A stretch of DNA of 49,482 nucleotides, taken from NCBI GenBank assembly GCA_002269645.1, contig NIVC01004342.1, forward strand, positions 1-49,482. The letters are read 5' to 3'. Shown piece by piece: positions 2,616 to 48,698 of the stretch. Source of the DNA: Macrostomum lignano. Taxonomy: Eukaryota. The notes under the pieces were generated by a model. The model was not told the origin of the DNA. It saw only the letters and a program-made list of their open reading frames with translations, and made no database searches. The position numbers were made by a program, and so were the translations under genes. Each line of letters starts with the position of its first letter. Within the stretch, counting starts at the first letter, position 1.

Positions 2616-4685
2616 ATGGCCGATGCCGGCGACAATGTACGCGTGGTGGTGCGCTGTCGCCCCATCAATCAGAAGGAGAAGGACGCCGGCAACAAGGTGA
2701 TTGTGAAAGTTGATGAGCTGCGCGGCTCCATCGAGATCACCAATCCGGCCGGGCCGCCTAGTGAGCCACCGAAAACATTCACTTTTGACATCGTTTTCGG
2801 CATGACCTGCAAACAGGTGGACATTTATAACAAAGTGGCCAGGCCCATTGTTGATTGTGTTATTGAAGGCTACAATGGCACGATATTCGCGTATGGCCAG
2901 ACCGGAACGGGCAAGACTTTCACGATGGAAGGCGTCAGGACCGTACCTGAGCTCCGTGGCATCATCCCGAACTCGTTTGCTCACATCTTCGGCGCCATCA
3001 GCAAGGCGACAGCCAATGTGACCTTTCTTGTGCGGGTCTCGTATCTAGAGATCTACAACGAGGAGGTGCGCGACCTGCTGGGCAAGGATCAGACAGCCAG
3101 ACTAGAAGTGAAAGAGCGGCCCGATGTGGGAGTGTACGTGAAGGATCTGTGCAGCTTTGTGTGTCACAATCCGGACGAAATGGACAAGCTGATGACCGTC
3201 GGAAACAAGAATCGTGTTGTAGGAGCCACGAACATGAACGAGCATAGCTCACGTTCTCATGCAATTTACACTGTGACGGTGGAATGTTCCGAAAAAGCAG
3301 TGACTGGTAAAACGATGCTCCGACAAGGCAAGCTGCATCTTGTAGACTTGGCTGGCAGCGAGCGTCAGGCAAAGACCGGAGCCACTGGTGTGAGGCTGAA
3401 GGAAGCCACAAAGATCAACTTGTCGCTGAGTACTCTTGGCAACGTGATTTCTGCACTTGTCGATGGAAAGAGTACCCACATTCCATACCGCAACAGCAAG
3501 CTCACTCGACTTCTTCAGGACTCACTTGGAGGCAACAGCAAGACCGTAATGTGCGCCAACTTTGGTCCAGCTGACTACAACTTTGATGAAACAATCAGTA
3601 CTTTGAGATACGCAAATCGGGCGAAGAACATCAAGAACAATGCTAAGATCAATGAGGATCCTAAAGATGCAATGCTGAGACAGTTCCAGAAAGAGATTGA
3701 GGATCTGAAGAAGCAGTTGGAGGATGGTGGCGGCATTCCAGAGGGAGACGAAGATGATGAAGATGACGAGGATGATGAGGACGTCGTTGTTGGCGAAGAC
3801 GGGCAAGAACGTCGAGTTCGCAAGCGGCGCGCCCTTAAAAGCCTTTCTAAAGACCAGATGCAGGAAATCGAGCAGCGCATTGCCGCAGATCGCCGTCGAT
3901 TAGAAAAAGATCAAAACATGGCTGAAGAGGAGCGCGACCGCGTTCGCCAGCAGCTGGAATCGCAGGAGCGCGAGCTCACGCGTCACCGTCAAGAGCAGCG
4001 GGCACTTGAACAGAAGCTGTCGGACCTGGAGAAGCGTCTTATCGTTGGTGGCGAGAACCTGTTGGAGAAGGCGACTGAACAGGAGCGGCTTCTTGAACAG
4101 AATGCAAAAGAGTTGGAGGCTAGGCGCCGGGAGGAAGAGCGACTTCGAACGCAGTTAAAAGAGAAGGAGCAAGCAAAGGTCGAGATTGAAGATCGCTACC
4201 GCAGTCTGGACGAAGAAGCCACTGCTAAGACGCGGAAGCTAAAGCGTCTTTGGCAGGTGTACATGGAAGCAAAGTCTGAGCTAGCCGACGTGCAAGAAGA
4301 GCACCAGCGCGAGATGGAAGGCTTGCTAGAAAACGTGCGACAACTGAGCAGAGATCTGCGCCTGCAGATGCTCGCTATTGACCAATGCATCCCGCGCGAA
4401 TATCAGGAACTCATCGAGAGCAACGTTGTATACAATGATGCCATCGGCGAGTGGCAACTCAAGGGTGTGGCCTACTCAGGCAATAACATGCGCAAGCGAG
4501 CCGCTGAAGCGGAGGAGAAAGAGAAGAAAGAGTTGGAGGAGAAGTTTGCGGAGCCGCCGCTGGAGACGGTGTACTTGCGCTATAGTGAGCGGCTGGACAG
4601 TGCCGTGTTCAAGCCAAGCGCTCGGTCCGCCAAAGGCAAAAAGTCGGCTAAAAGTGGCGGTAGGAAAAAGAAATCTGCTGCATAA
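2616..4685 (+). CDS. KIF3A: Kinesin-2 motor subunit KIF3A-like, copy 1 (689 aa, intronless)
   Basis: P-loop GQTGTGKT, switch I NEHSSRSH, switch II DLAGSE, neck INEDPKD, acidic hinge then GED..RKRR, coiled-coil stalk with LIVGGENLL, and tail AYSGNNMRK, all typical of KIF3A. Confidence 0.95.
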
Positions 4686-5698: not shown

Positions 5699-7132
5699 AT
5701 GTCGGAAGAAGAAAATAATTTTATTGTGGCGGTGAGGTGCCGGCCACTCAGTCAAAAAGAGATCACCGAAGGCAACAAGGTGACTGTGAAAATTGACGAG
5801 CTCAGAGGAACAGTTGAAATCACGGAGCCAAATGTTGTTCGCCAAGAAGGAATGGCCAGTCACGCGGGAGAGCCTAAGACATTTACATTCGATCACGTGT
5901 TCGGCATGCAGAGCAAGCAGGTGGACATTTATAACAAAGTGGCCAGACGAATTGTCGATTTCGTTTTGGAAGGCTACAATGGCACGATATTCGCGTATGG
6001 CCAGACCGGAACGGGCAAGACTTTCACGATGGAAGGTGTCAGGACCGTACCTGAGCTTCGTGGCATCATCCCGAACTCGTTTGCTCACATCTTCGGCGCC
6101 ATCAGCAAGGCGACGGCGAATGTGACCTTTCTTGTGCGAGTCTCGTATCTGGAGATCTACAACGAGGAGGTGCGCGACCTGCTGGGCAAGGATCAGACAG
6201 CCAAACTAGAAGTGAAAGAGCGGCCCGATGTGGGAGTGTACGTGAAGGATCTGTGCAGCTTTGTGTGTCCCAGTCCGGACGAAATTAACCAACTTTTAAT
6301 CGATGGCGCAAGGAATCGAATGTTTCATGCGACACGCATGGGCAGGCTAAGCTCTAGATCCAACAGGGTGTTAACAGTAACAATCGAGTGTTTAGAGCAA
6401 GGCCAAAATGGTAAAATAGTGGTGCGTCAAGGCAAACTGCATCTTGTAGTTTTTGCTGGTAGCGAGCGTCAGTCAAACGCTGGAGTCACTGGCGTGCGGC
6501 TGAAGGAGGCCTCTAAGATAGGCATGTCTATGAGTCCTTTTGGCAAAGTGATATCAGCACTCGTTGATGGGAAAAGTGTCCACATCCCTTACCGCGACAG
6601 CAAGCTCACTCGTATACTTAAGGATTCACTAGGTGGTAACAGCAAGACATTAATGTGCGCCAACTTCAGTCCAGCTGACTGTAACTATAAGGAGACTATA
6701 AGTACGTTAAGATTGGCCTGTAGAGCAAAGAGAGTCACTAATAGTGCCAAGATTAACGAGGATCCAAAAGACGCGATGCTGAGGCAGTTCCAAAAGGAGA
6801 TTGAACAGTTAAAAAGTCAACTGGAGTGTTGCGACAGAATTTCAGGCACGAACTGCGATGTTACAGACGCTGCTGCTACGAGTAAAGAAGACAGACACGG
6901 GCGTTCTGTTTGTAAGCAGCATGCGTTTAAGAGCCTCTCTAATGAGCAGATGCTGGAAATTGAGCGTCACTTCGCTGGCCGTCTCCGACCAGAACACGAT
7001 CCAAACATACCTGAACGGGAGCTTGACCAGTTTCACCATCAGTTGGTTTGGAGAAGCTCAGACTGTCTCCATTGGAGATTGTGTGCCATTCCAGCTGCAA
7101 TCAGCCAGGCAGTGCTGTTTTTAAATCCGTGA
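5699..7132 (+). CDS. Divergent, C-terminally truncated KIF3A paralog, copy 2 (477 aa; pseudo-motor or young pseudogene)
   Basis: P-loop intact. Switch I reads GRLSSRSN, switch II VFAGSE and helix 4 [12 protein letters not shown]. Stalk homology ends near ELDQFHHQL (~7045), followed by an unrelated tail. Confidence 0.8.
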
Positions 7133-8034: not shown

Positions 8035-10113
8035 ATGTCGGAAGAAAAGGAAGACAACGTCAAGGTGGTGGTGAGGTGCCGGCCACTCAGTCAAAAAGAG
8101 ATCACCGAAGGCAACAAGGTGACTGTGAAGATTGACGAGCTCAGAGGAACAGTTGAAATCACGGAGCCGAATGTTGTTCGCCAAGAAGGGATGGCCAGTC
8201 ACGTGGGAGAGCCTAAGACATTTACATTCGATCACGTGTTCGGCATGCAGAGCAAGCAGGTGGACATTTATAACAAAGTGGCCAGACGAATTGTCGATTT
8301 CGTTCTGGAAGGCTACAATGGCACGATATTCGCGTATGGCCAGACCGGAACGGGCAAGACTTTCACGATGGAAGGCGTCAGGACCGTTCCTGAGCTTCGT
8401 GGCATCATCCCGAACTCGTTTGCTCACATCTTCGGCGCCATCAGCAAGGCGACAGCCAATGTGACCTTTCTTGTGCGAGTCTCGTATCTGGAGATCTACA
8501 ACGAGGAGGTGCGCGACCTGCTGGGCAAGGATCAGACAGCCAAACTAGATGTGAAAGAGCGGCCCGATGTGGGAGTGTACGTGAAGGATCTGTGCAGCTT
8601 TGTGTGTCACAGTCCGGACGAAATGGACAAGCTGATGACCGTCGGAAACAAGAACCGTGTTGTAGGAGCCACGAACATGAACGAGCATAGCTCACGTTCT
8701 CATGCAATTTACACTGTGACTGTGGAATGTTCCGAAAAAGCAGTGACTGGTAAAACGATGCTCCGACAAGGCAAGCTGCATCTTGTAGACTTGGCTGGCA
8801 GCGAGCGTCAGGCAAAGACCGGAGCCACTGGTGTGAGACTGAAGGAAGCCACAAAGATCAACTTGTCGCTGAGTACCCTTGGCAACGTGATTTCTGCACT
8901 TGTCGATGGAAAGAGTACCCACATTCCATACCGCAACAGTAAGCTCACTCGACTTCTTCAGGACTCACTTGGAGGCAACAGCAAGACCGTAATGTGCGCC
9001 AACTTTGGTCCAGCTGACTACAATTTTGACGAAACTATGAGCACGTTACGATACGCAAATCGGGCAAAGAACATCAAGAACAATGCTAAGATCAATGAGG
9101 ATCCGAAAGACGCAATGCTGAGACAGTTCCAGAAGGAGATTGAGGATCTGAAGAAGCAGTTGGAGGATGGTGGTGGCATTCCAGAGGGAGACGAAGATGA
9201 TGAAGATGACGAGGATGATGAAGACGTTGTCGTTGGAGAAGGCAAGGAGAGGAAAAAGCGCAATCAATTCCGTGGCTTGTCTGACGAAGAGATAAAAAAA
9301 ATTGAGATTAATCTTCAGTCTGATTTGAAGAAACTCGAAAGCGACTCTCGCTTGTCAGAAAAAGAAAAGAATGACGCTCTTAAAAGACTTCAAGCGAAGC
9401 AACAGGAGCTGGACGAGCACATGAAGGATCGCCTTGCACTGCAGCGTAAGATGGAGAACCTCATGGGTCGGCTTATTGTTGGCGGTGAAAACTTGCTGGA
9501 GAAATCTGAGGCGCAGGAGAAGCTACTTGAAAAGACAAATCTGGAGCTGCAACAGCGCAAGAAGGAAGAGGAGCGACTCCGCGCTCAGCTGAAAGAGAAA
9601 GAGCAGGCCAAAGTTGAGATTGAGGATCGCTATCGCAGTCTTGGCGAAGAGGAAGAAGGAAAGACGCGTAAGCTAAAAAAGGTTTGGGAACTTTACACAA
9701 AGACGAAGGATGAGCTTGTAGAAATCAACGAGGTTCACCAACGCGAGATGGAAGGCCTGCTGGAAAATGTGCGCCAACTAAGCAAAGATCTGCGCCAGCA
9801 GTTGCTGATCATTGACCAATGCATTCCTCGGGAGTATCAGGAGCTCATTGAGCGGAACATTATTTGGAACGAATCCACAGGCGAGTGGCAGCTGAAGGGT
9901 ATAGCCTACTCAGGCAACAACATGCGCAAGCGGGCCGCCGAAGCCGAGGAGAAAGAGAAGAAGGAGATGGAAGATAAGTTTGCCGAGCTGCCGCTGGAGT
10001 CGGTGTACCTGTCATATAGCGAGCAGTTGGATCATCAGGTGTTCAAGCAGAGTGGCGGAAAATCCAAAAAGTCGAGTAAGCGTAACAAGCGCAGAGCGGC
10101 GAACCATGATTAA
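8035..10113 (+). CDS. KIF3A: Kinesin-2 motor subunit KIF3A-like, copy 3 (692 aa, intronless)
   Basis: All motor motifs intact; motor core nearly identical to copy 1; N-terminus and first coil diverged; full stalk and tail present. Confidence 0.95.
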
Positions 10114-15371: not shown

Positions 15372-16547
15372 GTGAACTCTGAACTCATCAACTTATGAAT
15401 ATGAACTCACTTATGAACTCATGAACCCAGAAACCCAGGATCAGGAACTTATGAACTCACTCATGAACTCACTCATGAACTCATGAACTCACTCATGAAC
15501 TCACTCATGAACTCACTCATGAACTCACTCATGAACTCACTCATGAACTCACTCATGAACTCACTCATGAACTCACTCATGAACTCACTCATGAACTCAC
15601 GAACTCACTCATCAACTCATGAACTCACTTATGAACTCATGAACTCACTCATGAACTCATGAACTCACTCATGAACTCATGAACTCACTCATGAACTCAT
15701 GAACTCACTCATCAACTCACTCATCAACTCATGAACTCACTCATCAACTCATGAACTCACTCATGAACTCATGAACTCATGAACTCATGAGCTCACTCAT
15801 GAACTCATGAACTCACTCATGAACTCACTCATCAACTCATGAACTCACTCATCAACTCATGAACTCACTCATGAACTCATGAACTCATGAACTCATGAAC
15901 TCACTCATCAACTCATGAACTCACTCATGAACTCATGAACTCATGAACTCACTCATGAACTCACTCATGAACTCATGAACTCACTCATGAACTCATGAAC
16001 TCACTCATGAACTCATGAACTCACTCATGAACTCATGAACTCACTCATGAACTCATGAACTCACTCATGAACTCATGAACTCACTCATGAACTCATGAAC
16101 TCACTCATGAAATCACTCATGAACTCATTGAACTCACTCATGAAATCACTCATGAACTCACTCATGAACTCATTGAACTCACTCATGAAATCACTCATGA
16201 ACTCACTCATGAACTCATGAACTCACTCATGAACTCATGAACTCACTCATGAACTCATGAACTCACTCATGAAATCACTCATGAACTCATTGAACTCACT
16301 CATGAAATCACTCATGAACACACTCATGAACTCACTCATGAACTCATTGAATTCACTCATGAAATCACTCATGAACTCACTCATGAAATCACTCATGAAC
16401 TCACTCATGAAATCACTCATGAACTCACTCATGAAATCACTCATGAACTCACTCATGAAATCACTCATTAAATCACTCATGAACTCACTCATGAACTCAC
16501 TCATTAAATCACTCATGAACTCATGAACTCATGAACTCATGAACTCA
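15372..16547. repeat. Composite satellite of 8-mer ATGAACTC and 12-mer ATGAACTCACTC
   Basis: Directly visible; variants ATCAACTC in the left-middle part and ATGAAATC in the right part. Confidence 0.97.
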
Positions 16548-18055: not shown

Positions 18056-21000
18056 ATGAGTTTCACGGACCGCGTCATCAGCCTGTGCGAGACTGCGCCA
18101 GAGGGGCGCAACGAGGAGGAGATCGAGTTCTTGGCCAGGTGGATCGAATCCAGCAGCTCGTATTTTCGGAAGCTGCGCAACAAAGGTACGCTGGTCCCTG
18201 AGTTCGGTGTTGTTGCTAGCCAATTGCGTTCTAGCGTTTGCACCTATTGAAGTGAATCTCAATGAGACAGAAGTGAATCTCAACGAGACAGAAGTGAATC
18301 TCAGTGAGACAGAAGTGAGTCTCAGTCAGACAGAAGCGAATCTCAATGAGACAGAAGTGAATCTTAATGAGACAGAAGTGATTCTCAATGAGACAGAAGT
18401 GAATCTCAATGAGACAGAAGTGAATCTCAATGAGACAGAAGTGAATCTCAATGAGACAGAAGTGAATCTCAGTGAGACAGAAGTGAATCTCAGTCAGACA
18501 GAAGCGAATCTCAATGAGACAGAAGTGAATCTTAATGACAGAAGTGAATCTCAATGAGTTGGAAACTAATGTCAATGGGAGGGAAACTAATCTCAATGAG
18601 AGGGAAACTAATCTCACTGAGAGGAAACTAATCTCACTGAGAGGAAACTAATCTCACTAAGAGGAAACTAATCTCACTAAGAGGAAACTAATCTCAGTGG
18701 GGGAGCCCACTTGTGTTTCAAGAAGTCTGAGAGTTCATGTACCGACTGTGCAGGCATTGTAAAGAAAAGAAATCAGTGCGAAAAGTTTGCATTGTCGGTT
18801 GAAATCTATCGCCATGTAGAAAAAATACAGAGAGGCTTTGGTCATGTGCCGCAACTCAATGGCGAAAGTCGACAAGCAGCCAGCCAGGAGGCAAGCAGTC
18901 ATTCCGAGTTTGCTGACCCTTTGAGCACGAACTCGGATATGTACGCAGGCACACGCTCACACAGGGTGGGTGTACGGCGGTCCTGCCTTTTTATGCGCAC
19001 TTTCAGCTAGGCATGAGTGCCCGACGTGACAAACTCCAGCTATTGCGCATCTGAAAGCTGCTTACGGCTGTTCAGTCCAAGGACTGGGGGGTCGCCACAC
19101 ACACTCCCAATTACCCCAGCTAATGCTGGCACCCATTTTACAGCTGGGTGAACTGAAGCAATGCAGAGTTGAGTGTCTTGCTCAAGGACACAATTGTTCC
19201 GAGTGGGTCAAGAATCGAACCCCCGACCTTTCAGTCGCGAGTCCGACGCTCTGACCACTAGTCTGCAACCCCTTTTGAAAAGTAACTTCAAACAAAATCG
19301 ACTGTAGCGTCCTACTTACTTCAGTTGTTTATGAATCGAACTCGGGGTCTCGAACTCAATTTCAACCTCAGATACTAGAATATGACTCGATTGGCCACTC
19401 AGGCATAAATACCTAGCAAAACAGCTTTCTACTTTCAGTTCAGTAGCAATGAAGAATACCTAAGCTATTTTATAAGAATAAAGGCAGCTGAGATGACTTT
19501 GATAAGTTCAGAAGCCCAAGCTTGCAGACGTAAACAGCTTGCTGATTGGTTCAACCATAATGTACATGATAAGCCACTGAAATGTACATGGCAGATTTAG
19601 GCTCGAACAACCGGGGAAAGTAATAAAAATTGGGTGGCGGGGCAGGGGTAGAGGTTCTGTTTGGAGTTTGAATGTTTAAAATGGGGGGTATAGCCAATAA
19701 CTCGTAAATACGCAGCCTGTAATCCTTGTCTTTAAAAATACATTAAAATGCTTCAGTTTAACTTGCTACTGAACTGAAAGTAGCTTACACGCAAATGTGT
19801 TGAGTGGCCCATCTAGTTATTCTAGCATTTGTGATTTCAACTCGTTAAAAAATCTTTCCAGACGCTATTCGAGAAATCGTTCGCGACTGCCACCTGCAGC
19901 GTTTCCATGCCAACGAGCTGATCATTCGGCAGGGCGAGAAGGGCCACAGTTTCTACCTGGTGATCACCGGACGCGTCTCCGTGTATGTCAACAGCGATGC
20001 CGAGCAGGCCTCGGAGCCTGTCACTGCTGCCGACGCCTCGGCTTCAGGCGCAGGGGGTTCCAACCAAGCGGATCGGGACCCAGAGGCGGATGCGGACGAT
20101 GCCGACGAGGATGTGGACTTGGCCTTCCTCGATGATGCTAATAAATTAGCCAGTCACGGCGAGGACGCAGAAGAGTTGCGCAGCCGCTTGCTAGGCGCTC
20201 ACGTGCTGCAGATGGGCGAGGGCTACGCATTCGGCGAGATCGCCCTCACCAGTCCTAACAGCATCCGTAAGGCGTCCGTCATCTGCGATGAGGATGTCGC
20301 AGTGCTAGTAATTCACCAGGTGTCATTTGCTAGAACTCTTAAAGCCTACCAGCTGCAGGAGTACCAGATGATCGAGAGCTTCATAGACACCTGCCCTGTG
20401 TTCGTCAACTGGCGACCGAAGCAGCGGCAGAGCCTGCGCAACAGCCTGCACAAGGAGGTGTACGGATACGGCGAGCCGATTGTGCAGCAGGGCCAGAAGA
20501 GCGGAGGCCTGTTCTTTATTGTTGGGTGAGGAAGCGAGTCCATCCACTTAATAGCTATAATATTGTAATATATGATAATTTTATGGCTGCGGGCACCTGG
20601 CGCAAAGCCTTCGGTGACATGACATCGTCCCATTTTCGAGGAGGGCGTTTCAAAATCTACAAAATTCACAAACCCGAATTACACCCGGCTTCACGTACGG
20701 CATACTCAAACTTTAAATACTCGGATATTAATTTTGAAGCATCTCCACTTAGGAACTGACAGCTGCGAGGTAGTTGAATTTCAGAGTAATCATGCCAGGT
20801 TTAGGATGCAGAAGTGTGCTTCAATAAATGGACGTGAGAAACGTGAAGTTGTCACGTGTTTCCAATGCGTGCATGGTTAGCAAGTGTAGGTATATCCTCG
20901 TATCCCAAGCATTGCTGCTGCAAGACAATGCTTGCTCCGGTTGCTTCCACCACCTCAGCTGAAATTTCCCGGCTCCCAAAAACTGCCTCTACTGTTGCTG

Positions 21001-24718: not shown

Positions 24719-24856
24719 ACGGCTCGGTGTCCAGAGTTGCTAACTTCAAATATTGAAAATATCGTTTTCGAATTTCTTGTTTGCAATGACACTGCTTCGC
24801 AGACGTTATTAACAGAGTCAGATAACAACTTTCGATGAAATCGCCTGCCTGCCTGC

Positions 24857-25945
<1,089 letters not shown>

Positions 25946-26521: not shown

Positions 26522-27473
26522 TATTCCCCCTGACGCTGCTCATATTCCCTGAAGTAACCCATATTCCCCTGAAGCTACCCGTAATACCCTGAAGCTACCC
26601 GTAATACCCTGAAGCTACCCTTATTCCCCTGAAGCTACCCATATTTCCCTAAAGCTACCCATATTCCACTGACACTACCCATATTACCCTGAAGCTACCC
26701 ATAGTACCCTGAAACTACCCGTATTACCCTGAAGCTATCCATATTTCCCTGAAGCTACCCGTAATACCCTGAAGCTACCCGTAATACCCTGAAGCTATCC
26801 ATATCACCCTGAAGCTACCCGTAATACCCTGAAGCTACCCGTAATACCCTAAAGCTACCCATAGTACCCTGAAGCTACCCGTAATACCCTAAAGGTACCC
26901 ATAGTACCCTGAAGCTACCCGTAATACCCTAAAGCTACCCATAGTACCCTGAAGCTACCCATATTACTCTGAAGCTACCCTTGTTACCCCAAAGCTACCC
27001 ATATTACCCTGAAGCTACCCATATTACCCCGTAGCTATCCATATTACCCTGAAGCTACCCATATTTCCCTGAAGCTACCCATATTACCCTGAAGCTACCC
27101 ATATTACCCCGTAGCTATCCATATTACCCTGAAGCTATCCATATTACCCTGAAGCTACCCATATTTCCCTGAAGCTACCCATATTACCCTGAAGCTACCC
27201 ATATTACCCCGTAGCTATCCATATTACCCTGAAGCTATCCATATTACCCTGAAGCTACCCATATTTCCCTGAAGCTACCCATATTACCCTGAAGCTACCC
27301 ATATTACCCTGAAGCTACCCATATTACCCTGAAGCTACCCATATTTCCCTGTAGCTACCCATATTACCCTGAAGCTACCCATATTACCCTGAAGCTACCC
27401 ATATTACCCTGAAGCTACCCATATTACCCTGAAGCTACCCATATTACCCTGAAGCTACCCATATTACCCTGAA
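26522..27473. repeat. 20-bp tandem repeat, ~47 units
   Basis: Consensus ATATTACCCTGAAGCTACCC; units are more degenerate at the left end. Confidence 0.97.
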
Positions 27474-28530: not shown

Positions 28531-29145
28531 ATGGCGGACAAGAAAACTGACGCTGCAAAGAAGACCAAAGAAGAGGACAGCAAGAAAATAGAGCCGCCGC
28601 CGCCAGTGCAAAAAGAGGAAGATGAAGAAGACGACGAGGACGAAGAGGACGAAGAAGAAGAAGAAGAGCAGAAAACGGACGCTAAGAAGCCCGCTGCTGA
28701 CCAGGATGCTGATGAGGACGATGAGGATGAGGAAGACGACGAAGATGAAGAAGAGAAACCGGCCGCTGCCACCGCCGCTAAAAAGGAGGAAGACGAAGAT
28801 GAAGAAGAAGATGAAGAAGATGAGGAGGATGAAGCTGAGCCAGCCAAGCCAGCGGCAGCGGCAGCTGATGACGAGGATGAGGATGAGGATGAGGATGAAG
28901 ATGATGAAGAGGAAGAAGAGAAAGCTGAGCCGGCCAAGCCAGCGGCAGCTGAGGATGATGATGAAGATGAGGATGAAGAAGATGAAGACGAAGACGAAGA
29001 AGAGCCGGCTAAGCCAGCAGCAGCAGCGGCTGAGGATGAGGACGAGGATGAAGACGAAGACGAAGACGAAGAAGAAGAAGAACAAGCGTCCGGGGTGCCA
29101 GCAAAAGTCGACGAGGAAGATGAAGACGAAGAAGAAGACGAGGAT

Positions 29146-29178
<33 letters not shown>

Positions 29179-29469
29179 AAGAAAGCGGAAGAGGATGGAG
29201 ACGAAGATGAGGACGAAGAAGAAGAGGAAGACGATGGCATGGACACACTGGACAAAATGGCGGCGGACATGAAGAAGTGGCTAGCGGAGTCCGGAGTGGA
29301 GCTGGACGCAGAGGAAACGGAGGGCATGTTGGCCGGATCCATGGACGTTGAAAAGTTCATGGAAGGCATGTCGGACGAAGACAAAGCGTTCGTAAACCAG
29401 GAGATCGAGGATATGAAGTCGATGTCGTTGCAGCAGATCATGGACCGGCTTGTGTCTGGGGCGGCGTGA
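28531..29469 (+). CDS. Hyper-acidic (Asp/Glu-rich) protein of unknown function, 312 aa, single exon
   Basis: ATG-to-TGA ORF with eight D/E blocks separated by K/P/A linkers and a non-repetitive Met-rich C-terminal ~76 aa. Mixed GAA/GAG/GAT/GAC usage is unlike a pure microsatellite. No signal peptide. Confidence 0.8.
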
Positions 29470-37461: not shown

Positions 37462-39701
37462 GCTCCACCAAAGCGCCAAGCAAAGCAGACAGCTCAGAAC
37501 AGACTGGGCATTTCAGCAGCCAATGGCGGCATTTCCAAGCCCGCTTCGTCGCCTCTAGCAGCAAAGGCTGATGTGCAAAACCGGCGACCACCATCAAGGC
37601 GACAGGCTGCGGTTCAGGCAATTGCTGCGTTGCCTGGATTGGCTAGCCAGGACCGCAGAAGGCAGTCTGCTCCGCCTGTTGCCAAGTTCTCTGCTACCAA
37701 GGATGCTGCCACCAAGAGTTCTGCCACCAAAGTTGATGCCACCAAGAGTTCTGTTACCAAGGATGCTGCCACCAAGAGTTCTGCTACCAAAGATGCTGCC
37801 ACCAAGAGTTCTGCTACCAAAGATGCTGCCACCAAGAGTTCTGCCACCAAAGTTGATGGAGTTAAAAAGGCAGCACAGGTGTCGAACAAGGCTTCAGGTG
37901 AGTGACGTGCCATAATACACATTGGGAAGAGGTGCCTAACCTACACGGGGCGGGTAGTTGCTCAGCCTACAGTAGGGGGTGGGTAGGTGGCCAGCCTACA
38001 GTAGGGAGTGGGTAGGTGGCCAGTCTACAGTAGGGAGTGTGTAGGTGGTCAGCCTACAGTAGGGGGTGGGTAGGTGCCCAGCCTACAGTAGGGGGTGAGT
38101 AGGTGGCCAGCCTACAGTAGGGGGTGGGTAGGTGCCCAGCCTACAGTAGGGGGTGGGTAGGTGCCCAGCCTACAGTAGGGAGTGGGTAGGTGGCCAGCCT
38201 ACAGTAGGCGGTGGGTAGGTGCCCAGCCTACAGTAGGGGTGGGTAGGTGCCCAGCCTACAGTAGGGGGTGGGTAGGTGCCCAGCCTACAGTAGAGAGTGG
38301 GTAGGTGGCCAGCCTACAGTAGGCGGTGGGTAGGTGGCCAGCCTACAGTAGGCGGTGGGTAGGTCCCCAGCCTACAGTAGGGGGTGGGTAGGTGGCCAGC
38401 CTACAGTAGGGAGTGTGTAGGTTGCCAGCCTACAGTAGGGAGTGTGTAGGTTGCCAGCCTACAGTAGGGGGTGGGTAGGTGCCCAGCCTACAGTAGAGGG
38501 TGGGTAGGTGCCCAGCCTACAGTAGGGGGTGAGTAGGTGGCCAGCCTACAGTAGGGGGTGGGTAGGTGCCCAGCCTACAGTAGGGGGTGGGTAGGTGCCC
38601 AGCCTACAGTAGGGGGTGGGTAGGTGCCCAGCCTACAGTAGGGAGTGTGTAGGTTGCCAGCCTACAGTAGGGAGTGTGTAGGTGGCCAGCCTACAGTAGG
38701 GAGTGGGTAGGTGGCTAGCCTACAGTAGGGAGTGGGTAGGTGGCCAGCCTACAGTAGGGAGTGGGTAGGTGGCCAGCCTACAGTAGGGGTGGGTAGGTGG
38801 CCAGCCTACAGTAGGGAGTGGGTAGGTGGCCAGCCTACAGTAGGGAGTGGGTAGGTGCCCAGCCTACAGTAGAGGGTGGGTAGGTGCCCAGCCTAAAGTA
38901 GGGGGTGGGTAGGTGGCCAGCCTACAGTAGGGGGTGGGTAGGTGCCCAGCCTACAGTAGGGGGTGGGTAGGTGGCCAGCCTACAGTAGGGGGTGGGTAGG
39001 TGCCCAGCCTACAGTAGGGGTGTGGTAGGTGCCCAGCCTACAGTAGGGGGTGGGTAGGTGGCCAGCCTACAGTAGGGAGTGGGTAGGTGGCCTACAGCCT
39101 ACAGTACAGAGGGGGGTATCGGCCCAGCCTGCAGAGCCTGACCTTCCTCCGTTTGATTTCTCAATGTTCCACAGGCGCCAAGCGGCAGCCGAGGAAGCCA
39201 GAAGCGGAAAAGAAGCAGAGCAAAATGGCGCCAAAGCAGAAAAGAAGCGGCGCCGGCGGCGGCAGCAGGAAGTCGGCAGCGCCCCGAGACCCATTCGACA
39301 TCAGCGGCCTGGATGTCGATGTCGACGAGGACGATAGTGTCGCGACCAGCGTTCGACCGAAGTCGAAAGGTCGCAAATCTTCAACAACGCCAGCTCCAGC
39401 GCCAGCATCGGCGCCAGCGACTAGCGCTGTCGGGCATTCCCAGCGCCAACTGCTGCTGTGCCACAGGCACGCCTATCAGTTTTTTACACCGGCGCGCCGG
39501 CGCCAACAGAGCGGCGCTGGCAGACAGTTGGTCAAGTCGGCTAAGGAGAACCAATCCGCCGCGTCTGGCGCCAGCGGTAGCGGCGCCGATTCTGACGTAG
39601 ACAGCGCCGAAGAGGAGGAGACCGCGCCGGCGTCGCCGCGTTTTGACCGACAACGACAGTCGGCGTCGGCAACTGCACCCGCGACGGATGCGTGGCGTTA
39701 G
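37462..39701 (+). CDS. Two 3' exons of a Lys/Ala/Ser-rich low-complexity protein (5' exon not located)
   Basis: Exon 37462-37897 (ctgcag|GCT...TCA G|gtgagt) joins exon 39175-39701 (ccacag|GC) in phase 1. Contains 10-aa repeats DAATKSSATK and RDPFDISGLDVDVDEDD; stop TAG at 39699-39701. Confidence 0.65.
37963..39105. repeat. 29-bp G-rich intronic tandem repeat, ~39 units
   Basis: Unit CAGCCTACAGTAGGG(A/G)GTGGGTAGGTG(G/C)C; period 29 (37963, 37992). Confidence 0.97.
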
Positions 39702-40568: not shown

Positions 40569-41008
40569 AATGCATTAGGTCAGTGTAAACTAACCACATG
40601 TATTTATAATGAACAACTACATGTGGTGCCTAACAGAGTTTAAATACTGGAGCATTGTGATTCGGTAACTTCGGAATTATTGTATAAAAGATGCTTGAAG
40701 TATATTAATATTAGAAAGTCCAGTAGGAGTGTCAACTATCAAAGAAGAACATGTATATTTGTATCCACTCAGTAATGTTAAAATTTGTTTTGCGATTTGG
40801 TCGGTGTACAAGCGTACAAAATACATGTACACTAATAAGTATCAGAATAATAATAGTAAAAGGAAAACTGATATTAACTAATTTGATTAACTGTAGTGCT
40901 TAGCGATAGTTTTCTGTTAGCAGCGTTATAACAATATTCATGTGATGAAGGTTGAAACTGGCATGTAATTTTTAGATAGAGAAGTCACCAGAGCACTCAG
41001 TAAACCTC

Positions 41009-42661
41009 CTACTCAGCGCTGTAGTCGTTGACAGCCTCTTCCACTGCCTCGGGCGACCGAGACTCAGCCTCAATCGGAGCCGTTGAGTTCTTCCGCGGCA
41101 GCAGGAAGGGCTTCAGCCGGCGGGCCCAGCGGCCCAGACTGCGGCGCTGGCTCTCGTCGACGGTGCTGCAGCCGACGGTGGTCCGGTTCAGGCCGTCCAG
41201 CAGGTCTGCCAGACTGCGCAGACGGCGGATCAGCCGACCACGGAAGCGACGTCCGCGGCGGCGACGCCACTCGGCGGCGGAGTCCGACATTGCAGTCGAC
41301 TTGCTGCCGCTACCGCGGCGGCTTCTCCAGCTGGCGCGTCGAAAGAAGCTCCGGATGCGGCGCAAGCGACTCGACCTCACTCTGCGCTTCGGGCTGGCAG
41401 TCGGCTCTCGATCTGGGGCAGGACTCCGCTTGGTTTCGAGCTCCTCCGATTCCTTCAAATACAAAAAATACTAGAAATACAAAAAGGCGCTTCGATTGTG
41501 GAAATCTTTCATTTGCAGTAGTAACGTTTGTGCATTCTATGAGAGATTGACTACTGAAGAGTAGCAAGAAAAGAATTTCAAGCGAATCTCTTATAGGACA
41601 CAAGTATAGCTCACAATTCCTATTTGTACATGATTTATTTGCCCAACAATCCGTTCGCCCTCTACTCAAACACGCATACGAGCTACGTACGGGCGCGTAT
41701 TCGCTCTTCTCCAGCTCATCGGGATTGTCGACGCTTTCAAGTTCGTTGGCGATCTCTTCTGTAGCTTCAGAATCCTCAACGGGAGCAGCTGGTGAGGCGG
41801 CCGAGTTACTCGGCTTCACTCTCCGCTGCGGGCGGGCGATCGGCTCTCGATCTGGAGCAGGACTCCGTTTGGCTTCGAGCTCCTCCGATTCCTTCAATAG
41901 AAACACAATAAGCGCTCCGATTGTGGAAATCTTGAAATTGCAATACTAATTCGTGTGTGTGCATTCTATCGAAATCAACTACTGAAGAGTAGCATGACAA
42001 GACTCTCTCATGAAAGCGAATCTCTTATTGTACATGTGGAGGCTCACAATTCATATTTGTACATGTATATAGCGTATTAAACACGCATACTTACGGGCGC
42101 GTACTCGCTCTCCTCCAGCTCATTGGGCTTATCGACGCTGCCAAGGTCGTTGCCGATCTCCTCCGTAGCTGCAGAGTCCTCAGCGGCAGCAGGTGAGGCG
42201 TCCAATATGCGTTGAAGGAATCGCCGGGTACGGCGCGATCGACTCGAACTCTCGATTCTGCGCTGCCGGCTGGCGGTTGGCTCTAGATCTGGAGCAGGAC
42301 TCCGTTTGGTTTCGAGCTCCTCCTCCGATTCCTTCAATAGAAATCCAGAAGCGTCAACTTTGTTAGTTTTACAATTAGCTCGTAGTAAGTCACGTGTGTG
42401 CATTCTATAGGAGATTGGCTACTGAAGAAGAGTAGCAAGAAAAGAATACACAACATGTATTAGCGTATTTCCCTAAAAATAATTGCTTACGGGCGCGTAC
42501 TCGCTCTTCTCCAGCTCGTCGGGATTGTCAACGCTTTCAAGATCGTTGGCGATCTCCTCCGTAGCTGCAGAGCCCTCAGCGTCAGCAGGTGAGGCGGCGA
42601 ATGCGGAGGCGGCCGCCGCGAGGCCCAGCAAGAGGAGCGCAGTCAGCAGCAGAGGTTTCAT
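41009..42661 (-). CDS. Secreted modular peptide precursor (4 exons, 350 aa): signal peptide, acidic spacers, KR-SPAP sites, Arg-rich segments
   Basis: Exons 42661-42491 (57 aa, MKPLLLTALLLLGLAAAASA), 42331-42095 (79 aa), 41891-41691 (67 aa) and 41452-41009 (147 aa + TAG). All introns are GT-AG, phase 0, and mutually homologous. Confidence 0.85.
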
Positions 42662-42738
42662 GTTTGCAAGAACAGATTTTAGACCTTAGGCTTATATGGA
42701 GATACTGGATTCTGTAATAAGCTAATACTGACGCTGTC

Positions 42739-42744
42739 TTTATA
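42739..42744 (-). promoter_or_regulatory. TATA box candidate for the secreted precursor gene
   Basis: TATAAA on the minus strand, 78 nt upstream of the ATG at 42661. Confidence 0.4.
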
Positions 42745-43628
42745 GACGATGGAATATCCTAGATAAGGCCTCTCAAATCCGGGCTAAGAGTTGCAATGCC
42801 ATATCCGCAGCGGCGCAGCACAGGGCCGTAAGGCAGTTTTGAATAGAATGAAAACAATGCAGAATAGAGACACTTCATGGATTCTCGAGACACAGCGAGT
42901 CCGCGTCTTTGCCAGAGAGAACTAAAACGAGAGTCTGGATAGAGTTTCTTGGATGCGTGGCTTGCAAAGCTATGCATAGTCTTTTGGTTGAAGATCTCCT
43001 TGGCTTTGCCCGCTAATAAACAGGTCTATAAATACATTTGCACTGCCGTGGTTAAAGTTTAACAACAATAAGAGCGGAGAATGATAAATCCGGATTTCAA
43101 CAAAATTCAAAGGCAAAACCTTTATAAAATATAGTTAATGGTAGGTAAAGATGTGAATTATATTTTATAACATTGCACAAATACGTCCAATTTTGTTCTT
43201 TCGCGCTCGAAAATACTAATGAAGTTAGTCTATACGAAGAATTAGTATTGCAATTCATAGGAAATAGTAAATATATAGTAGTTTTGTGTAATATTATAGA
43301 GCATTGAATTGCAGGCAGTATCGAGGATTTGACCAGAACTTTATATACGAGTATAGCAAATCTAAAACTAGAAAAACGCACAACAAAGCAGGCAAGCGTG
43401 GATTTAATAAATACTTTGAAAAGTCTCGACATCTTGAACTAGATTTAAGCCTGATAAAGCCAGTTTAAGCCAGTTGACAGGTAAATATGGCGTCTCAATC
43501 ATTAGTAAACTGAAAGCTATATAAAACGAATTTGCACATGCAGCAGAGTATTGCGGTACAGTTGGGGACATGCAGAATGTTTGATGTCAAGGGTTTTTCA
43601 GACAAGGTTCTGAGATGTAGGAGAGAGC

Positions 43629-45302: not shown

Positions 45303-48300
45303 TCAAAGCCGGGTCTCTTGGCCGCCAGCCGGAAATCCGTCGGGCAACGGCAGTGCTGAGTACTGGCTGCGCCGCCGCCTGTCGGCCCGGCCGCCGCCGA
45401 CTCCGCACAGGCAGCAAATGCACAGCGACATCACTATTGTGAGCAGCTGCGGGCGCGGTCATTGGGGGCGGGCAATCTGTCAGTACTTGAATTGTTACAC
45501 TTTATTATACGCTATTAGATATATATTCGTATTTTAGGGCAAAAGTCGTTTTATTAACCCTCTTACACCTCCCCCAGCTGAACCCTCCGACCGCTTCTTG
45601 CCGCACAAAACCTCTACCCTGCCCGCCTCCATTTAATTGCCTTTCTCGGTGTTCTATATCTAAAGCTGCTATGTACATTAAAAAGACTCATTTATTGGCC
45701 CTCTTAACTCCCCCCGGTTGAATTCCCCGACCGCGTCTTGCCGCACGAAACGTCTACCCCCCCCCGCCGGCCTCCATTTAATTGCCTTTCTCGGTGTTCT
45801 ATATCTAAAGCTGCTATGTACATTAAAAAGACTCATTTATTGGCCCTCTTAACCCCCCCCCCCGGTTGACTTCCCCGACCGCGTCTTGCCGCACGAAACG
45901 TCTACCCCCCCCGCCCGCCTCCATTTAATTGCCTTTCTCGGTGTTTCAGCCAAATGCTGACTGCCATGTACATTATCAGTGGCGCTGGCAAATGTACATT
46001 ATGCCTTATAAGTCACTCTCAACTACCTTTCGTGTCGTGAAATAGCTTACGCATGCTTCCTTACTACTGAACTGAAAGTAGAAAAACTGTCAAGAAAACT
46101 GATAAAAAATCCACAGCCACAATTATTATGGTTCTGAGAACTGGCAGAGACTATTCAAATATGCTTTGCCAATTAGCCTACTTATTATATAGTAGCGTGA
46201 AATGTTGCTCATTATGTGATACCAGTTCTAATTAAAGTCGTCCCTGGATATGGCTAATAATATTATAAATTAATTACAATCTGCCCTATTTGGGCCAGAT
46301 GTGCAACCGACAGCTCAGCCGCAGCTATTGCGCGGCGCATCTGAAGGCTGCGTACGGCTGTTCAGTCCAAGGACTGGGGGGGGGGGGTCGCCACACCTCA
46401 ATTACCCCCATCTAATGCTGGCACCCATTTTACAGCTGGGTGAACTGAAGCAATGCAGAGTTAGGCGTCTTGCTCAAGGACACAAATTGTTCCGAGTGGG
46501 TCACGAATCAAACCCTCGACCTCGTCGTGAGTCTGACGCTCTAAGTCAAACCACTAGGCTACAACCCGCCCTTACTTGGCTATCAAACACACCGCTAAAA
46601 CATTTTACATTACTATAAGTAGAATAATCGGAAAACTAGCGAATTAATTCACCTCTAGCGCTGTCAGGCCAACAGAAACGAATAGGCCGATGCGGATCGC
46701 GCGCCAGGTAGTTTCCATGACAACGGAACGGCAGCCCTGGAATAAAGCGATTGAGGATAGCCATGTCGCATCTGAGCTTATATACTATTTAAGCTCGCGT
46801 CTACAACCCCATTTGAAGTTTAGCAATTGCCACAGGTTTTGGATAAAAAATCTACTATTAGCAACAAGTGGCGATTCACACCATGAGGGCCAACCCCAAG
46901 GCACAGAGTGTACATGGCCTTACGATTAGAAAGTCAGGGGGCTGCTGTACACCATGTGGGAGCGAGTGCGCGCCTGCGTACAGCATTGGCGCGCTTGTGT
47001 GCCCAGGAGTCAGATGAGGAATAGGCAGAATCAGCGCCAGTTGTGGGACAATGTCATCTACAGCACCTTAAGCTAATGCTCACCCTATCATAGGCCAGCT
47101 CAAACGGCAGCGAGTACGGCTTGGGCTCGCACTCTGTAGGGCCCAGCTTCTCTGAGTTGCAGCAGGACCAAGGAATCTGCAGGGTATCGCCGCCTGCGGC
47201 ACCTCTGTAGTCCCTGTAGGACTGACCGCCGCAGCAGTAAAACTGAAAAATAAGAGATTTTCTTGATTGTCAAACTTTTGACCCCGTGTGCAGAAATCAG
47301 AATAAGAAACAAGAAATAACAGAACCAACCCGCTTGTGAAGGATGTCCATTAGGCCAGCATTGCCATCATTACTATACTGATAGTTGCGCTGCCAGGTAT
47401 CGAAGGACTCGCCAATCGTCTCTTTAACCTGAATTTGTATTTTTAGTATGATAGAAGATAAGCTACTTACACTGTTCAGTAGTATTTTCTGTGTGTTAAA
47501 TTAAATAAAAACATTTGTCCAGAAAAAATATGACCCGTAGAAGGGAATTTTCTAACGTCAGATACTAGCATCCCCTTTGACCCTTGGCATCTCAGCAACT
47601 TCACCCGTGAGCATTGGCATCGCAGTAACTCCAGCCGTGAGCATTGGCATCAGCAACTTCACCCGTGAGCCTTGGCATCTCAGCAACTCCAGCCGTGAGC
47701 ATTGGCATCTCAGCAACTTCACCCGTGAGCATTGGCATCTCAGCAACTTCACCCGTGAGCATTGGCATCTCAGCAACTCCAGCCGTGAGCATTGGCATCT
47801 CAGCAACTCCAGCCGTGAGCATTGGCATCTCAGCAACTTCACCTGTGAGCATTGGCATCTCAGCAACTTCACCTGGGAGCATTGGCATCTCAGCAACTCC
47901 AGCCGTGAGCATTGGCATCTCAGCAACTTCACCCGTGAGCATTGGCATCTCAGCAACTTCACCTGTGAGCATTGGCATCTCAGTAACTTCACCTGTGAGC
48001 ATTGGCATCTCAGCAACTCCACCTGTGAGCATTGGCATCTCAGCAACTTCACCTGTGAGCATTGGCATCTCAGCAACTTCACCTGTGAGCATTGGCATCT
48101 CAGCAACTCCACCTGTGAGCATTGGCATCTCAGCAACTCCACCTGTGAGCATTGGCATCTCAGCAACTTCACCTGTGAGCATTGGCATCTCAGCAACTCC
48201 ACCTGTGAGCATTGGCATCTCAGCAACTCCACCTGTGAGCATTGGCATCTCAGCAACTCCACCTGTGAGCATTGGCATCTCAGCAACTCCACCTGTGAGC

Positions 48301-48698
48301 AGTGCTAAAAAGCTCAGCAAGAAGCCACTGGGTAATGTCCCCAGCTATTTTCCCAGGCACAGACAGAAAAGACAAATGCTAATAAATTAATAATAATAAT
48401 AATAATAATAATAATTAATAATAATAGACAAATGCATTACCAAGAGCAGAATTGACTATCAGGGAAGCGGCCAGTGCCAGGTGGCTGGCATAGGTGGCGA
48501 TCATGATTGGCACAAAGCTTGCCAGCATGCATTTCTTAGGCCAGACAGCAGTGCAGACTCCCAACAGGCCAGCCAGTCCAAGGCAGCCGTGCCAGGCCAA
48601 TGCACACATACTTGGCTATAGCTGGCACTCTCTTTGCTGAATGGTGGTTCAGCCAGCACCACATAGATTGCTGCACCACACAGGCCACTGCTGATTAC
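45303..48698 (-). CDS. Tetraspanin (5 exons seen; first exon not found; TM1-TM3 exon frameshifted)
   Basis: Exons ~48698-48441, 47428-47330, 47242-47084, 46736-46653 and 45446-45303. The last four join in phase 0: ...MDILHKR|FYCCGGQSY...IPWSCC...TEC...YDR|GC...GLFVSVGLTALE|LLTIVMSLCICC...ETRL*. CCG, PxSCC and GC motifs give a 6-Cys EC2. Confidence 0.92.
45551..45945. repeat. ~145-bp tandem triplication in the last tetraspanin intron
   Basis: CCGCAC(A/G)AAAC at ~45601, 45741 and 45888; CCTCCATTTAATTGCCTTTCTCGGTGTT occurs three times. Confidence 0.92.
46322..46567 (-). mobile_element. tRNA-derived CORE-type SINE, family A copy 2
   Basis: Colinear with 19038-19271 and ends at the same 3' boundary (GCGCAATAGCTG). 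Confidence 0.8.
46884..47056 (+). mobile_element. SINE family B, 5'-truncated fragment in a tetraspanin intron
   Basis: TGAGGGCCAACCCCAAGGC, AGTGTACATG, GCTGTACAC, GCCTGCGTAC, GCGCGCTTGT and CAATGTC are colinear with the 30.6-30.9 kb copy. Confidence 0.7.
47575..48300. repeat. 30-bp intronic tandem repeat, ~24 units
   Basis: Unit ATTGGCATCTCAGCAACT(T/C)CACC(C/T)GTGAGC. Confidence 0.97.
48385..48426. repeat. (AAT)n microsatellite
   Basis: Directly visible, just downstream of the tetraspanin splice donor. Confidence 0.9.

What the first reader, a model, noticed from the sequence alone, without database searches (positions are those of the whole stretch)
41452..42490. Precursor grown by duplicating a ~440-bp exon+intron cassette with all phase-0 junctions
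Exon starts are 440 and 439 bp apart (42331, 41891, 41452), every junction reads SEYAP|ESEE, and all three introns share sequence (ACTGAAGAGTAGCA..., GTGTGCATTCTAT on the plus strand). Symmetric exons allow cassette gain, loss or skipping without frameshift, a built-in diversification mechanism. Spacers are conserved while payloads diverge.
Basis: partly seen in the sequence, partly recalled or inferred. Interest (0 to 1): 0.7.

Follow-up and report, generated by a model that had tools for sequence, protein, structure and literature searches.

The report
Flatworm secreted-protein gene with triplicated cassette
An uncharacterised gene found only in the flatworm Macrostomum lignano grew by copying a ~400-440-bp stretch spanning one intron three times, an ordinary way for secreted repeat proteins to grow, and I found no sign that cassette number varies or that exons are skipped.

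Summary
On the minus strand lies a 4-exon, 350-aa gene (exons 42661-42491, 42331-42095, 41891-41691, 41452-41009). All three introns are GT..AG and phase 0, and every junction reads SEYAP|ESEE. Copies align across exon-intron-exon (self-BLAST E 1e-111).

The window is the whole contig NIVC01004342.1 of Macrostomum lignano. The gene is Mlig021339 (g3/g4), an unnamed "hypothetical protein" with no Pfam domain. No relative outside this species turned up among 1.84 billion cluster representatives.

- The 440/439 period is a coincidence of compensating indels (237+203 against 201+238). The acidic blocks sit 404 and 396 bp apart.
- The uniform phase 0 is inherited from one ancestral intron.
- The internal exons are chimeras of the last exon's head and the first exon's tail, so at least the first duplication broke within coding sequence.
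- The cassettes are old (silent divergence 0.17-0.33). All four genomic copies carry the same number, and the RNA-seq-based annotation shows no exon-skipped isoform.
- The acidic modules are under constraint (dN/dS 0.2-0.6). The arginine-rich segments drift (about 0.8-1.2), and the middle one is nearly deleted.

The protein looks like a secreted, disordered, charge-block pro-protein with conserved KR and RR sites. Its function is unknown. This is an ordinary example of a known kind.

The parts
42491..42661 (-). Exon 1 (171 nt). It encodes the ATG, a 22-aa signal-peptide-like N-terminus (MKPLLLTALLLLGLAAAASAFA) and the first acidic 'tail', ASPADAEGS...SEYAP.
   Evidence: The spliced product is identical to the NCBI protein P0003, Mlig021339g3/g4.
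42332..42490 (-). Intron 1: 159 nt, GTAAGC...TTGAAG, phase 0.
42095..42331 (-). Exon 2 (237 nt, 79 codons). Parts in order: head ESEEELETKR-SPAPDLEPTASRQ-RR, basic segment IESSSRSRRTRRFLQRILD, acidic tail ASPAAAEDS...SEYAP.
41892..42094 (-). Intron 2: 203 nt, GTAAGT...TTGAAG, phase 0.
41691..41891 (-). Exon 3 (201 nt, 67 codons). Parts in order: head ESEELEAKR-SPAPDREPIARPQ-RR, a 7-residue remnant VKPSNSA in place of a basic segment, acidic tail ASPAAPVEDS...SEYAP.
41453..41690 (-). Intron 3: 238 nt, GTACGT...TTGAAG, phase 0. It is the most variable segment among the four genomic copies.
41009..41452 (-). Exon 4 (444 nt including the TAG stop). Parts in order: head ESEELETKR-SPAPDREPTASPK-RR, an arginine-rich 55-aa block (net +20), a region predicted helical with one Cys and two N-x-S/T sequons, and an acidic C-terminal tail.
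41336..42602 (-). The full tandemly triplicated tract. Three units each run acidic tail, intron, head plus the start of the basic segment. Approximate unit boundaries are 42602, 42206, 41802 and 41336.
   Evidence: Self-BLAST E 1e-111 and 1e-41; repeat families D1 and D2; alignment A1.
42383..42447 (-). Best-conserved block of intron 1: small hairpin GCTACT-CTTCTTC-AGTAGC followed by ATAGAATGCACAC. The counterparts are 41944-42007 in intron 2 and 41520-41579 in intron 3.
   Evidence: There is no Rfam match. Conservation is below that of the exons, so residual common ancestry is enough to explain it.
42738..42744 (-). TATAAAG, 77-83 nt upstream of the ATG. This is a candidate core promoter element, seen by inspection only.
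   Evidence: Sequence; inference, not tested.

Best explanation

Origin (inferred from the alignments). A two-exon ancestor had a signal peptide plus acidic tail, one phase-0 intron, and then a head plus basic C-terminus. It underwent two rounds of in-frame tandem duplication of a ~400-440-bp segment spanning that intron. The first duplication had its breakpoints in coding sequence, near the signal-peptidase site of exon 1 and about 39 codons into the last exon. That created chimeric internal exons (head, basic stub, tail). Identical junctions and uniform phase 0 follow automatically. The array then froze, and the copies have since diverged by 17-33% at silent sites.

Product (shown from sequence and model). 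The product looks secreted and largely disordered, and it is a block polyampholyte. It has three conserved acidic modules of about 44 aa (net -12 to -14). Each ends in KR, then a 13-residue Pro-rich peptide SPAPD(R/L)EP(T/I)A(S/R)(P/R)(Q/K), then RR. Arginine-rich segments of very unequal length follow (19, about 0 and 55+ aa).

Function (inferred, unproven). I take it to be a pro-protein cleaved by proprotein convertases at the conserved KR and RR sites. The acidic modules would act as charge-neutralising pro-pieces for the arginine-rich peptides in the secretory pathway. This is the layout of host-defence or secretory-granule peptide precursors. I cannot tell which fragment is the active one.
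For: Gene structure and identity:
- Structure and translation.
- Identity to NCBI Mlig021339g3/g4, and the window equals contig NIVC01004342.1.
- The annotation derives from RNA-seq transcript assemblies: PMC5730564.

Duplication:
- Cassette-to-cassette alignment across exon-intron-exon: E 1e-111, alignment A1, repeat families.
- Intron JC distance of 0.19-0.29 is similar to the coding dS of 0.17-0.33.
- Homology of exon 2 to exon 4 runs through codon ~39 (RSFFRR). Homology to exon 1 starts at about codon 20.

Constraint:
- Module dN/dS is 0.21-0.57. Fisher p is 0.001 and 0.02 for two of three pairs.
- The basic segment has dN/dS of about 0.8-1.2.
- Among four genomic copies, 7 of 1053 exon sites vary, against 51 of 600 intron columns. 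None of the 5 amino-acid changes falls in an acidic block.

Protein features:
- Charge blocks of -14, -12 and -13 against +6, +20 and +4. KR/RR positions are conserved in all three modules. There are seven R-x-[KR]-R motifs and two N-x-S/T sequons.
- AlphaFold2 (single sequence) gives mean pLDDT 54. Acidic modules are coil. Helices fall in the signal peptide and the basic segments at 87-101, 231-245, 260-295 and 303-320.

Orphan status.
Against: - I could retrieve no expression site, peptidomic or functional data. Gene-ID and peptide-string searches of the literature and of six papers' supplements found nothing.
- Cleavage is inferred from motifs only. No signal-peptide or cleavage predictor was available.
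- The basic segments are riddled with furin-type sites, so they might be chopped rather than released intact.
- Their amphipathicity does not exceed composition-matched shuffles for three of four segments (p 0.12-0.25; only 303-320 reaches p 0.009).
- The middle cassette has no basic peptide at all.
- The 13-mer has no amidation Gly, and 5 of its 13 positions vary.
- The order of the two duplications is unresolved. Exon and intron distances disagree on which units are closest.
- The structure model is low-confidence and has no alignment depth.
Confidence: 0.5

Rival explanations
1. The symmetric cassettes form a diversification device. Cassette number varies between individuals or species, or exons 2 and 3 are skipped, to generate a repertoire of products with different payloads.
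For: - Exons 2 and 3 are phase 0-0, so skipping or loss would stay in frame.
- The payload diverges faster than the spacer.
- Multi-unit peptide precursors with variable unit number are known elsewhere, for example honeybee apidaecin (from my own knowledge, not tested here).
Against: - All four genomic copies have the same four exons and 350 aa.
- Cassettes are 17-33% diverged at silent and intronic sites, so there has been no recent gain, loss or homogenisation.
- Only 350-aa CDS forms exist in an RNA-seq-based annotation that retains alternative CDS.
- The one 'variant' (P0005, +13 aa) is a model from the older ML2 assembly that uses an upstream AG. It is not an exon-skipped form.
- Payload 2 is nearly deleted rather than diversified.
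Confidence: 0.1
2. The protein is not cleaved. It works as an intact secreted block polyampholyte. Alternating polyanionic and polycationic blocks would drive self-association or condensation, for example as secretory-granule matrix, mucus or rhabdite material, gland secretion or seminal fluid. Duplication would simply tune the acid-to-base ratio.
For: - The charges are almost balanced: 67 D+E against 60 K+R, net -8, arranged in long blocks.
- Disorder is predicted across the modules.
- The whole acidic module is conserved, not just the peptides flanked by cleavage sites.
- S-x-E and acidic Tyr contexts (ESEE, SEYAP) resemble secretory-pathway phosphorylation and sulfation sites. This is by inspection and my own knowledge.
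Against: - KR and RR sit at exactly conserved positions in all three modules and bracket a constant-length 13-mer. An uncleaved scaffold would not need this.
- No homology to any known structural or adhesive protein.
- The gene ID is absent from the held supplements of the M. lignano adhesion paper.
Confidence: 0.25
3. The conserved 13-mers (SPAPD...), and perhaps the acidic peptides, are the real products of a multi-copy peptide-hormone or neuropeptide-like precursor. The arginine-rich stretches would be processing linkers or leftovers.
For: - Three copies of a constant-length peptide are bracketed by KR and RR after a signal peptide. This is the classical signature of a multi-copy neuropeptide precursor.
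- The basic stretches tolerate deletion and evolve near-neutrally.
Against: - There is no amidation Gly.
- 5 of 13 positions vary between copies, which is more than in the flanking acidic sequence.
- No similarity to any known peptide family.
- The long structured-looking C-terminal region with sequons is unexplained.
Confidence: 0.15
4. A young orphan gene of little or no function, whose internal repeats are a neutral by-product of a tandem-repeat-rich genome.
For: - No relatives outside the species.
- The sequence is low-complexity and disordered.
- The contig is packed with minisatellites.
- Between genomic copies there are 5 non-synonymous and 2 synonymous changes.
Against: - Module dN/dS is significantly below 1 for two of three pairs.
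- The reading frame, splice sites and KR/RR sites are intact in all cassettes and in all four copies, despite 17-33% silent divergence.
- The gene model comes from transcript evidence.
Confidence: 0.1

Closest known systems
Internal tandem exon duplication in secreted repeat proteins and polyprotein precursors (general mechanism)
   Same: A tandem unit containing an intron is copied in frame. The introns remain homologous, all junctions share one phase, and the protein gains repeated modules.
   Different: The internal exons are head/tail chimeras, so the first breakpoints lay in coding sequence rather than in introns. The array is old and fixed at three units.
Amphibian skin host-defence peptide precursors (dermaseptin/magainin type), with signal peptide, conserved acidic pro-piece, KR, then a variable cationic peptide (from my own knowledge)
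   Same: The layout is shared: signal peptide, strongly acidic spacer ending in KR, then cationic segments. The pattern of conserved pro-piece and faster-evolving cationic part is also shared.
   Different: - No sequence homology.
- An extra 13-mer plus RR sits between the spacer and the cationic part.
- One cassette lacks a cationic peptide.
- The cationic parts are Arg-rich with internal furin-type sites, and their amphipathicity is not significant.
- Activity is untested.
Honeybee apidaecin-type multipeptide precursors (from my own knowledge)
   Same: Repeated units of a conserved acidic spacer, a dibasic site and a peptide lie within one precursor.
   Different: Apidaecin repeats lie within one exon, are near-identical and vary in number between genes and alleles. 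Here each unit carries an intron, the units are 17-33% diverged at silent sites, and the number is the same in all four copies.
Multi-copy neuropeptide precursors with acidic spacers (for example molluscan FMRFamide precursors) and granins (from my own knowledge)
   Same: Shared features are a signal peptide, Glu-rich disordered spacers and repeated short peptides bracketed by dibasic sites.
   Different: There is no amidation signal and no family homology. The spacer is more conserved than the bracketed peptide. The long poly-Arg blocks are atypical.

Membership tests
Tandem internal (exon-intron) duplication | Adjacent copies homologous across both coding and intronic sequence | tested here: met
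   Self-BLAST E 1e-111 across exon-intron-exon. Intron pairs are 76-83% identical. See also alignment A1.
Tandem internal (exon-intron) duplication | Reading frame preserved: duplicated exons are multiples of 3 and share one intron phase | tested here: met
   Exons are 237 and 201 nt, all introns are phase 0, and the ORF is intact at 350 aa.
Alternatively spliced or copy-number-variable cassette array | Different cassette numbers among gene copies, individuals or species | tested here: not met
   The four genomic copies (g1-g4) all encode 350 aa with identical exon lengths. They all come from one inbred line. Other strains and species were not available.
Alternatively spliced or copy-number-variable cassette array | Transcript isoforms lacking exon 2 and/or exon 3 | tested here: inconclusive
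   No shorter CDS is present in the RNA-seq-based annotation or the protein databases. However, the assembly filtered out minor isoforms, and raw reads could not be examined.
Proprotein-convertase-processed secreted peptide precursor | N-terminal signal peptide | tested here: inconclusive
   There is a positively charged n-region, a 16-residue hydrophobic core and A-F-A before the predicted cleavage site, by inspection. AlphaFold2 models residues 2-21 as a helix. No dedicated predictor was available.
Proprotein-convertase-processed secreted peptide precursor | Conserved dibasic sites bracketing repeated peptides | tested here: met
   KR, a 13-mer and RR are present at the same position in all three modules, and there are seven R-x-[KR]-R motifs.
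Proprotein-convertase-processed secreted peptide precursor | Cleavage products actually detected | not testable with these tools
   This needs peptidomics or a western blot.
Anionic pro-piece / cationic host-defence peptide precursor | Cationic amphipathic mature peptide | tested here: inconclusive
   The segments carry net +6 and +20 and are modelled as helices at pLDDT 50-73. Their hydrophobic moment exceeds composition-matched shuffles only for 303-320 (p 0.009). The other segments give p 0.12-0.25.
Anionic pro-piece / cationic host-defence peptide precursor | Conserved pro-piece with a faster-evolving mature part | tested here: met
   Spacer dN is 0.07-0.11 (dN/dS 0.21-0.57), against payload dN of 0.28-0.53 (dN/dS 0.8-1.2). 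The payload estimate rests on only 15-18 codons.
Anionic pro-piece / cationic host-defence peptide precursor | Sequence homology to a described antimicrobial-peptide family, or measured antimicrobial activity | tested here: not met
   No Pfam hit and no homologue among 1.84 billion representatives. Activity cannot be tested with these tools.
Known neuropeptide families | Homology to a family, or a C-terminal amidation signal (Gly before the dibasic site) | tested here: not met
   The 13-mers end in Q, Q and P(K) before RR, with no Gly. No homologues were found.

The most novel reading that the evidence does not exclude
Mlig021339 might found a flatworm-specific class of self-neutralising secreted precursors. 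Polyanionic modules would hold poly-arginine peptides inert, or co-condense with them, until convertase cleavage. The number of in-frame cassettes, or their occasional skipping, would set the acid-to-base ratio and hence the release or activity of a host-defence, glandular or reproductive secretion.
Probability: 0.1. Interest if true: 0.5.

Novelty: new member of a known kind. Interest (0 to 1): 0.22.

Why it matters
This is a clean, datable example of how a lineage-restricted secreted gene grows by in-frame duplication across an intron. It creates chimeric internal exons without any pre-existing exon cassette being shuffled. It also flags an uncharacterised M. lignano secreted protein with conserved convertase sites and extreme charge blocks. 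M. lignano supports in situ hybridisation, RNAi and transgenesis, so its role could be tested directly. Nothing here challenges current understanding, and the proposed diversification mechanism has no support so far.

Tried and rejected
- Homology searches. The word-indexed search of 5.8 billion clusters returned only the same gene. The exhaustive HMMER search of 1.84 billion representatives returned only two older models of the same gene. Pfam gave only sub-threshold noise. A metagenome scan confirmed no relative. A 78-aa module query returned nothing, not even the source protein, probably because of compositional filtering.

- Literature. The gene ID, accession numbers and peptide strings are absent from 8.3 million full texts. 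The gene ID is absent from the held supplements of six M. lignano papers. Searches on Macrostomum neuropeptides and antimicrobial peptides found nothing relevant.

- Intronic RNA or mobile element. Rejected. There is no Rfam match. The motif occurs only in these introns within the window. The cassette occurs nowhere else in the window. Intron conservation (59% invariant columns) is below exon conservation (78%).

- P0002, P0005 and P0006 as cassette-number variants. Rejected. They are partial, alternative-acceptor or frameshifted models from the older assembly.

- Bacterial promoter and terminator scan. Irrelevant for a eukaryote.

- Amphipathic-helix argument for the payloads. Mostly not significant.

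- Tandem Repeats Finder did not report the ~440-bp repeat.

Full report
**1. What is there**

Reading the minus strand of 40800-43200 and translating it gives a four-exon gene.
- Exon 1: 42661-42491, 171 nt.
- Exon 2: 42331-42095, 237 nt.
- Exon 3: 41891-41691, 201 nt.
- Exon 4: 41452-41009, 444 nt including the TAG stop.
- Introns of 159, 203 and 238 nt. All are GT..AG and all are phase 0.
- Every junction reads ...SEYAP|ESEE....

The spliced product is 350 aa.

**2. Is it more than chance?**

Yes.
- Self-BLAST of the region aligns 42602-41794 with 42206-41354 (E 1e-111) and 42447-42209 with 41576-41336 (E 1e-41).
- The repeat finder gives three copies of a 117-nt and of a 90-nt coding block at 71-89% identity, plus several intronic blocks.
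- A three-way alignment is colinear across tail, intron and head.
- The cassette occurs nowhere else in the window.

Two corrections apply.
- The equal 440/439 spacing is accidental (237+203 against 201+238). The acidic blocks themselves are 404 and 396 bp apart.
- The two quoted intron motifs each carry one insertion or mismatch in one of the three introns.

**3. Identity of the locus**

- The protein is 99-100% identical to M. lignano 'hypothetical protein BOX15_Mlig021339' g1-g4.
- The window is the complete 49,482-bp contig NIVC01004342.1 of assembly GCA_002269645.1. Locus L003 is base-identical to the window over the gene ±300 bp.
- That annotation derives from genome-guided RNA-seq transcript assemblies. 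IDs that share a prefix denote transcripts at least 95% identical, arising from the redundant, hidden-polyploid genome of the DV1 line (PMC5730564).
- No Pfam family matches.
- An exhaustive HMMER pass over 1.84 billion cluster representatives found only two older models of the same gene. A metagenome scan found nothing.
- Within what these databases hold, this is an orphan gene, and the searchable literature does not mention it.

**4. How the array arose**

This section is inference from the alignments.
- Exons 2 and 3 each consist of a head homologous to the start of exon 4 (ESEELExKR-SPAPD...-RR plus the first residues of the basic segment) and a tail homologous to the mature part of exon 1 (ASPA...SEYAP).
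- Homology to exon 1 begins at about codon 20, at the predicted signal-peptidase site. Homology to exon 4 runs to about codon 39.
- The simplest history starts from a two-exon ancestor with one phase-0 intron. A tandem duplication with both breakpoints in coding sequence created a chimeric internal exon. A second duplication then occurred by unequal exchange between the repeats.
- Identical junctions and uniform phase follow from this history. They are not an independent design feature.
- Exon 3 is shorter mainly because about 11 codons of the basic segment are missing.

**5. Age and stability**

- Between cassettes, the spacer-plus-head coding sequence has dS 0.17-0.33, and the introns have JC distances of 0.19-0.29.
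- Between the four genomic copies, only 7 of 1053 exon sites vary, and 51 of 600 intron columns vary. Most of the intron differences are in one copy's introns 2 and 3.
- The duplications therefore long predate the divergence of the four copies. There is no sign of recent homogenisation.
- All four copies retain exactly the same exon lengths.
- The apparent variants are not cassette-number variants. P0002 starts inside intron 2. P0005 adds 13 aa by using an in-frame AG 39 nt upstream of exon 3. P0006 is frameshifted. All three come from the older ML2 assembly.

**6. Constraint**

- Acidic tail plus head: dN 0.07-0.11 and dN/dS 0.21-0.57. The excess of silent change gives Fisher p = 0.001, 0.02 and 0.23 for the three pairs.
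- Basic segment, exon 2 against exon 4: 8 of 18 residues are identical, dN is 0.28-0.53 and dN/dS is about 0.8-1.2. This rests on very few sites.
- Of the 5 amino-acid differences among genomic copies, none lies in an acidic block.
- 'Spacer conserved, payload diverging' is therefore true as a description. It could equally mean that the conserved module is the functional part.

**7. The protein**

- After a signal-peptide-like N-terminus (MKPLLLTALLLLGLAAAASAFA|A, by inspection), the chain alternates three acidic blocks with basic blocks. The acidic blocks carry net -14, -12 and -13. The basic blocks carry +6, about +1, +20 and +4.
- In total there are 67 D+E against 60 K+R.
- Each acidic block ends in KR, followed by a constant-length 13-mer (SPAPDLEPTASRQ, SPAPDREPIARPQ or SPAPDREPTASPK) and then RR.
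- There are seven R-x-[KR]-R motifs, mostly inside the basic segments, and two N-x-S/T sequons. The single Cys lies in the C-terminal region.
- Single-sequence AlphaFold2 gives mean pLDDT 54. The acidic modules are coil. Helices fall at 87-101, 231-245, 260-295, 303-320 and 337-347.
- The hydrophobic moment of the basic helices does not beat composition-matched shuffles, except for 303-320.

**8. Most likely mechanism, and rivals**

I commit to a secreted pro-protein cleaved at the conserved KR and RR sites. The acidic modules would act as charge-neutralising pro-pieces for the arginine-rich peptides. This is the layout of host-defence or secretory-granule precursors. My confidence is about 0.5 for the package, but above 0.95 for the duplication itself.

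The rivals are listed here, each with my confidence.
- An uncleaved block-polyampholyte secretion (0.25).
- A multi-copy hormone-like precursor whose products are the 13-mers (0.15).
- A near-functionless young orphan gene (0.1).

None can be settled without data on expression, peptides or other species, and I could not reach any of these.

**9. Comparison with known systems**

- Mechanistically this is ordinary internal tandem duplication.
- Architecturally it resembles amphibian skin-peptide precursors, apidaecin-type multipeptide precursors, and acidic-spacer neuropeptide precursors or granins. These comparisons come from my own knowledge.
- It is not a member of any of them, since homology was tested and not found.

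**10. Verdict**

- The 'built-in diversification' reading is unsupported, and what could be tested partly contradicts it.
- This is a new member of a known kind, of modest interest.

Noticed in passing
window 2616-4685, 5699-7132, 8035-10113 (+ strand): Three tandem, apparently intronless kinesin-motor ORFs of 689, 477 and 692 aa (Pfam Kinesin, E 1e-102 to 1e-120). The middle copy loses similarity after about 400 aa and ends early, so it may be a decaying duplicate.
   Followed up: partly
window-wide, e.g. 24845-25945, 26528-27473, 37947-39106, 47584-48301, 15447-16547: The contig is packed with long micro- and minisatellite arrays: (CTGT)n of about 276 copies, a 20-mer x47, a 29-mer x40 and a 30-mer x24. 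This fits the genome paper's figure of 15% simple and tandem repeats. They create many spurious long ORFs.
   Followed up: no
window 42383-42447, 41944-42007, 41520-41579 (- strand): Each of the three introns keeps a small hairpin GCTACT-CTTC(TTC)-AGTAG(C/T) followed by ATAGAATGCACA, about 85-110 nt upstream of the acceptor. There is no covariation and no Rfam hit, and conservation is below exon level. It is probably residual ancestry, though an intronic splicing element is not excluded.
   Followed up: partly
L001 against L002/L003/L004, gene region (window 41009-42661): Divergence among the four genomic copies is very uneven. Exon 1 and intron 1 are identical in all four. Intron 3 of L001 differs at 40 of 238 columns, including a 13-nt indel next to the acceptor. 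This may reflect gene conversion or mosaic ancestry of the copies.
   Followed up: no
window 41892-41932 (- strand): An in-frame AG sits 39 nt upstream of exon 3. A UniProt model from the older ML2 assembly (P0005, 363 aa) uses it and so adds ISTIGALIVFLLK. Whether it is a real alternative acceptor is untested.
   Followed up: partly
window 28531-29469 (+), 1322-2029 (+), 19960-20529 (+): Other coding-looking ORFs on the contig. One is a 312-aa Asp/Glu-rich ORF with no Pfam hit. One is GDSL-lipase-like. One is a fragment carrying a cyclic-nucleotide-binding domain. The related locus L001 also shows a tetraspanin gene upstream of Mlig021339.
   Followed up: no
(tool behaviour): A 78-aa query taken verbatim from the protein returned no hit in the word-indexed protein search, not even the source protein. 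Highly charged, low-complexity queries seem to be filtered out, so negative results for such sequences from that tool are weak.
   Followed up: no
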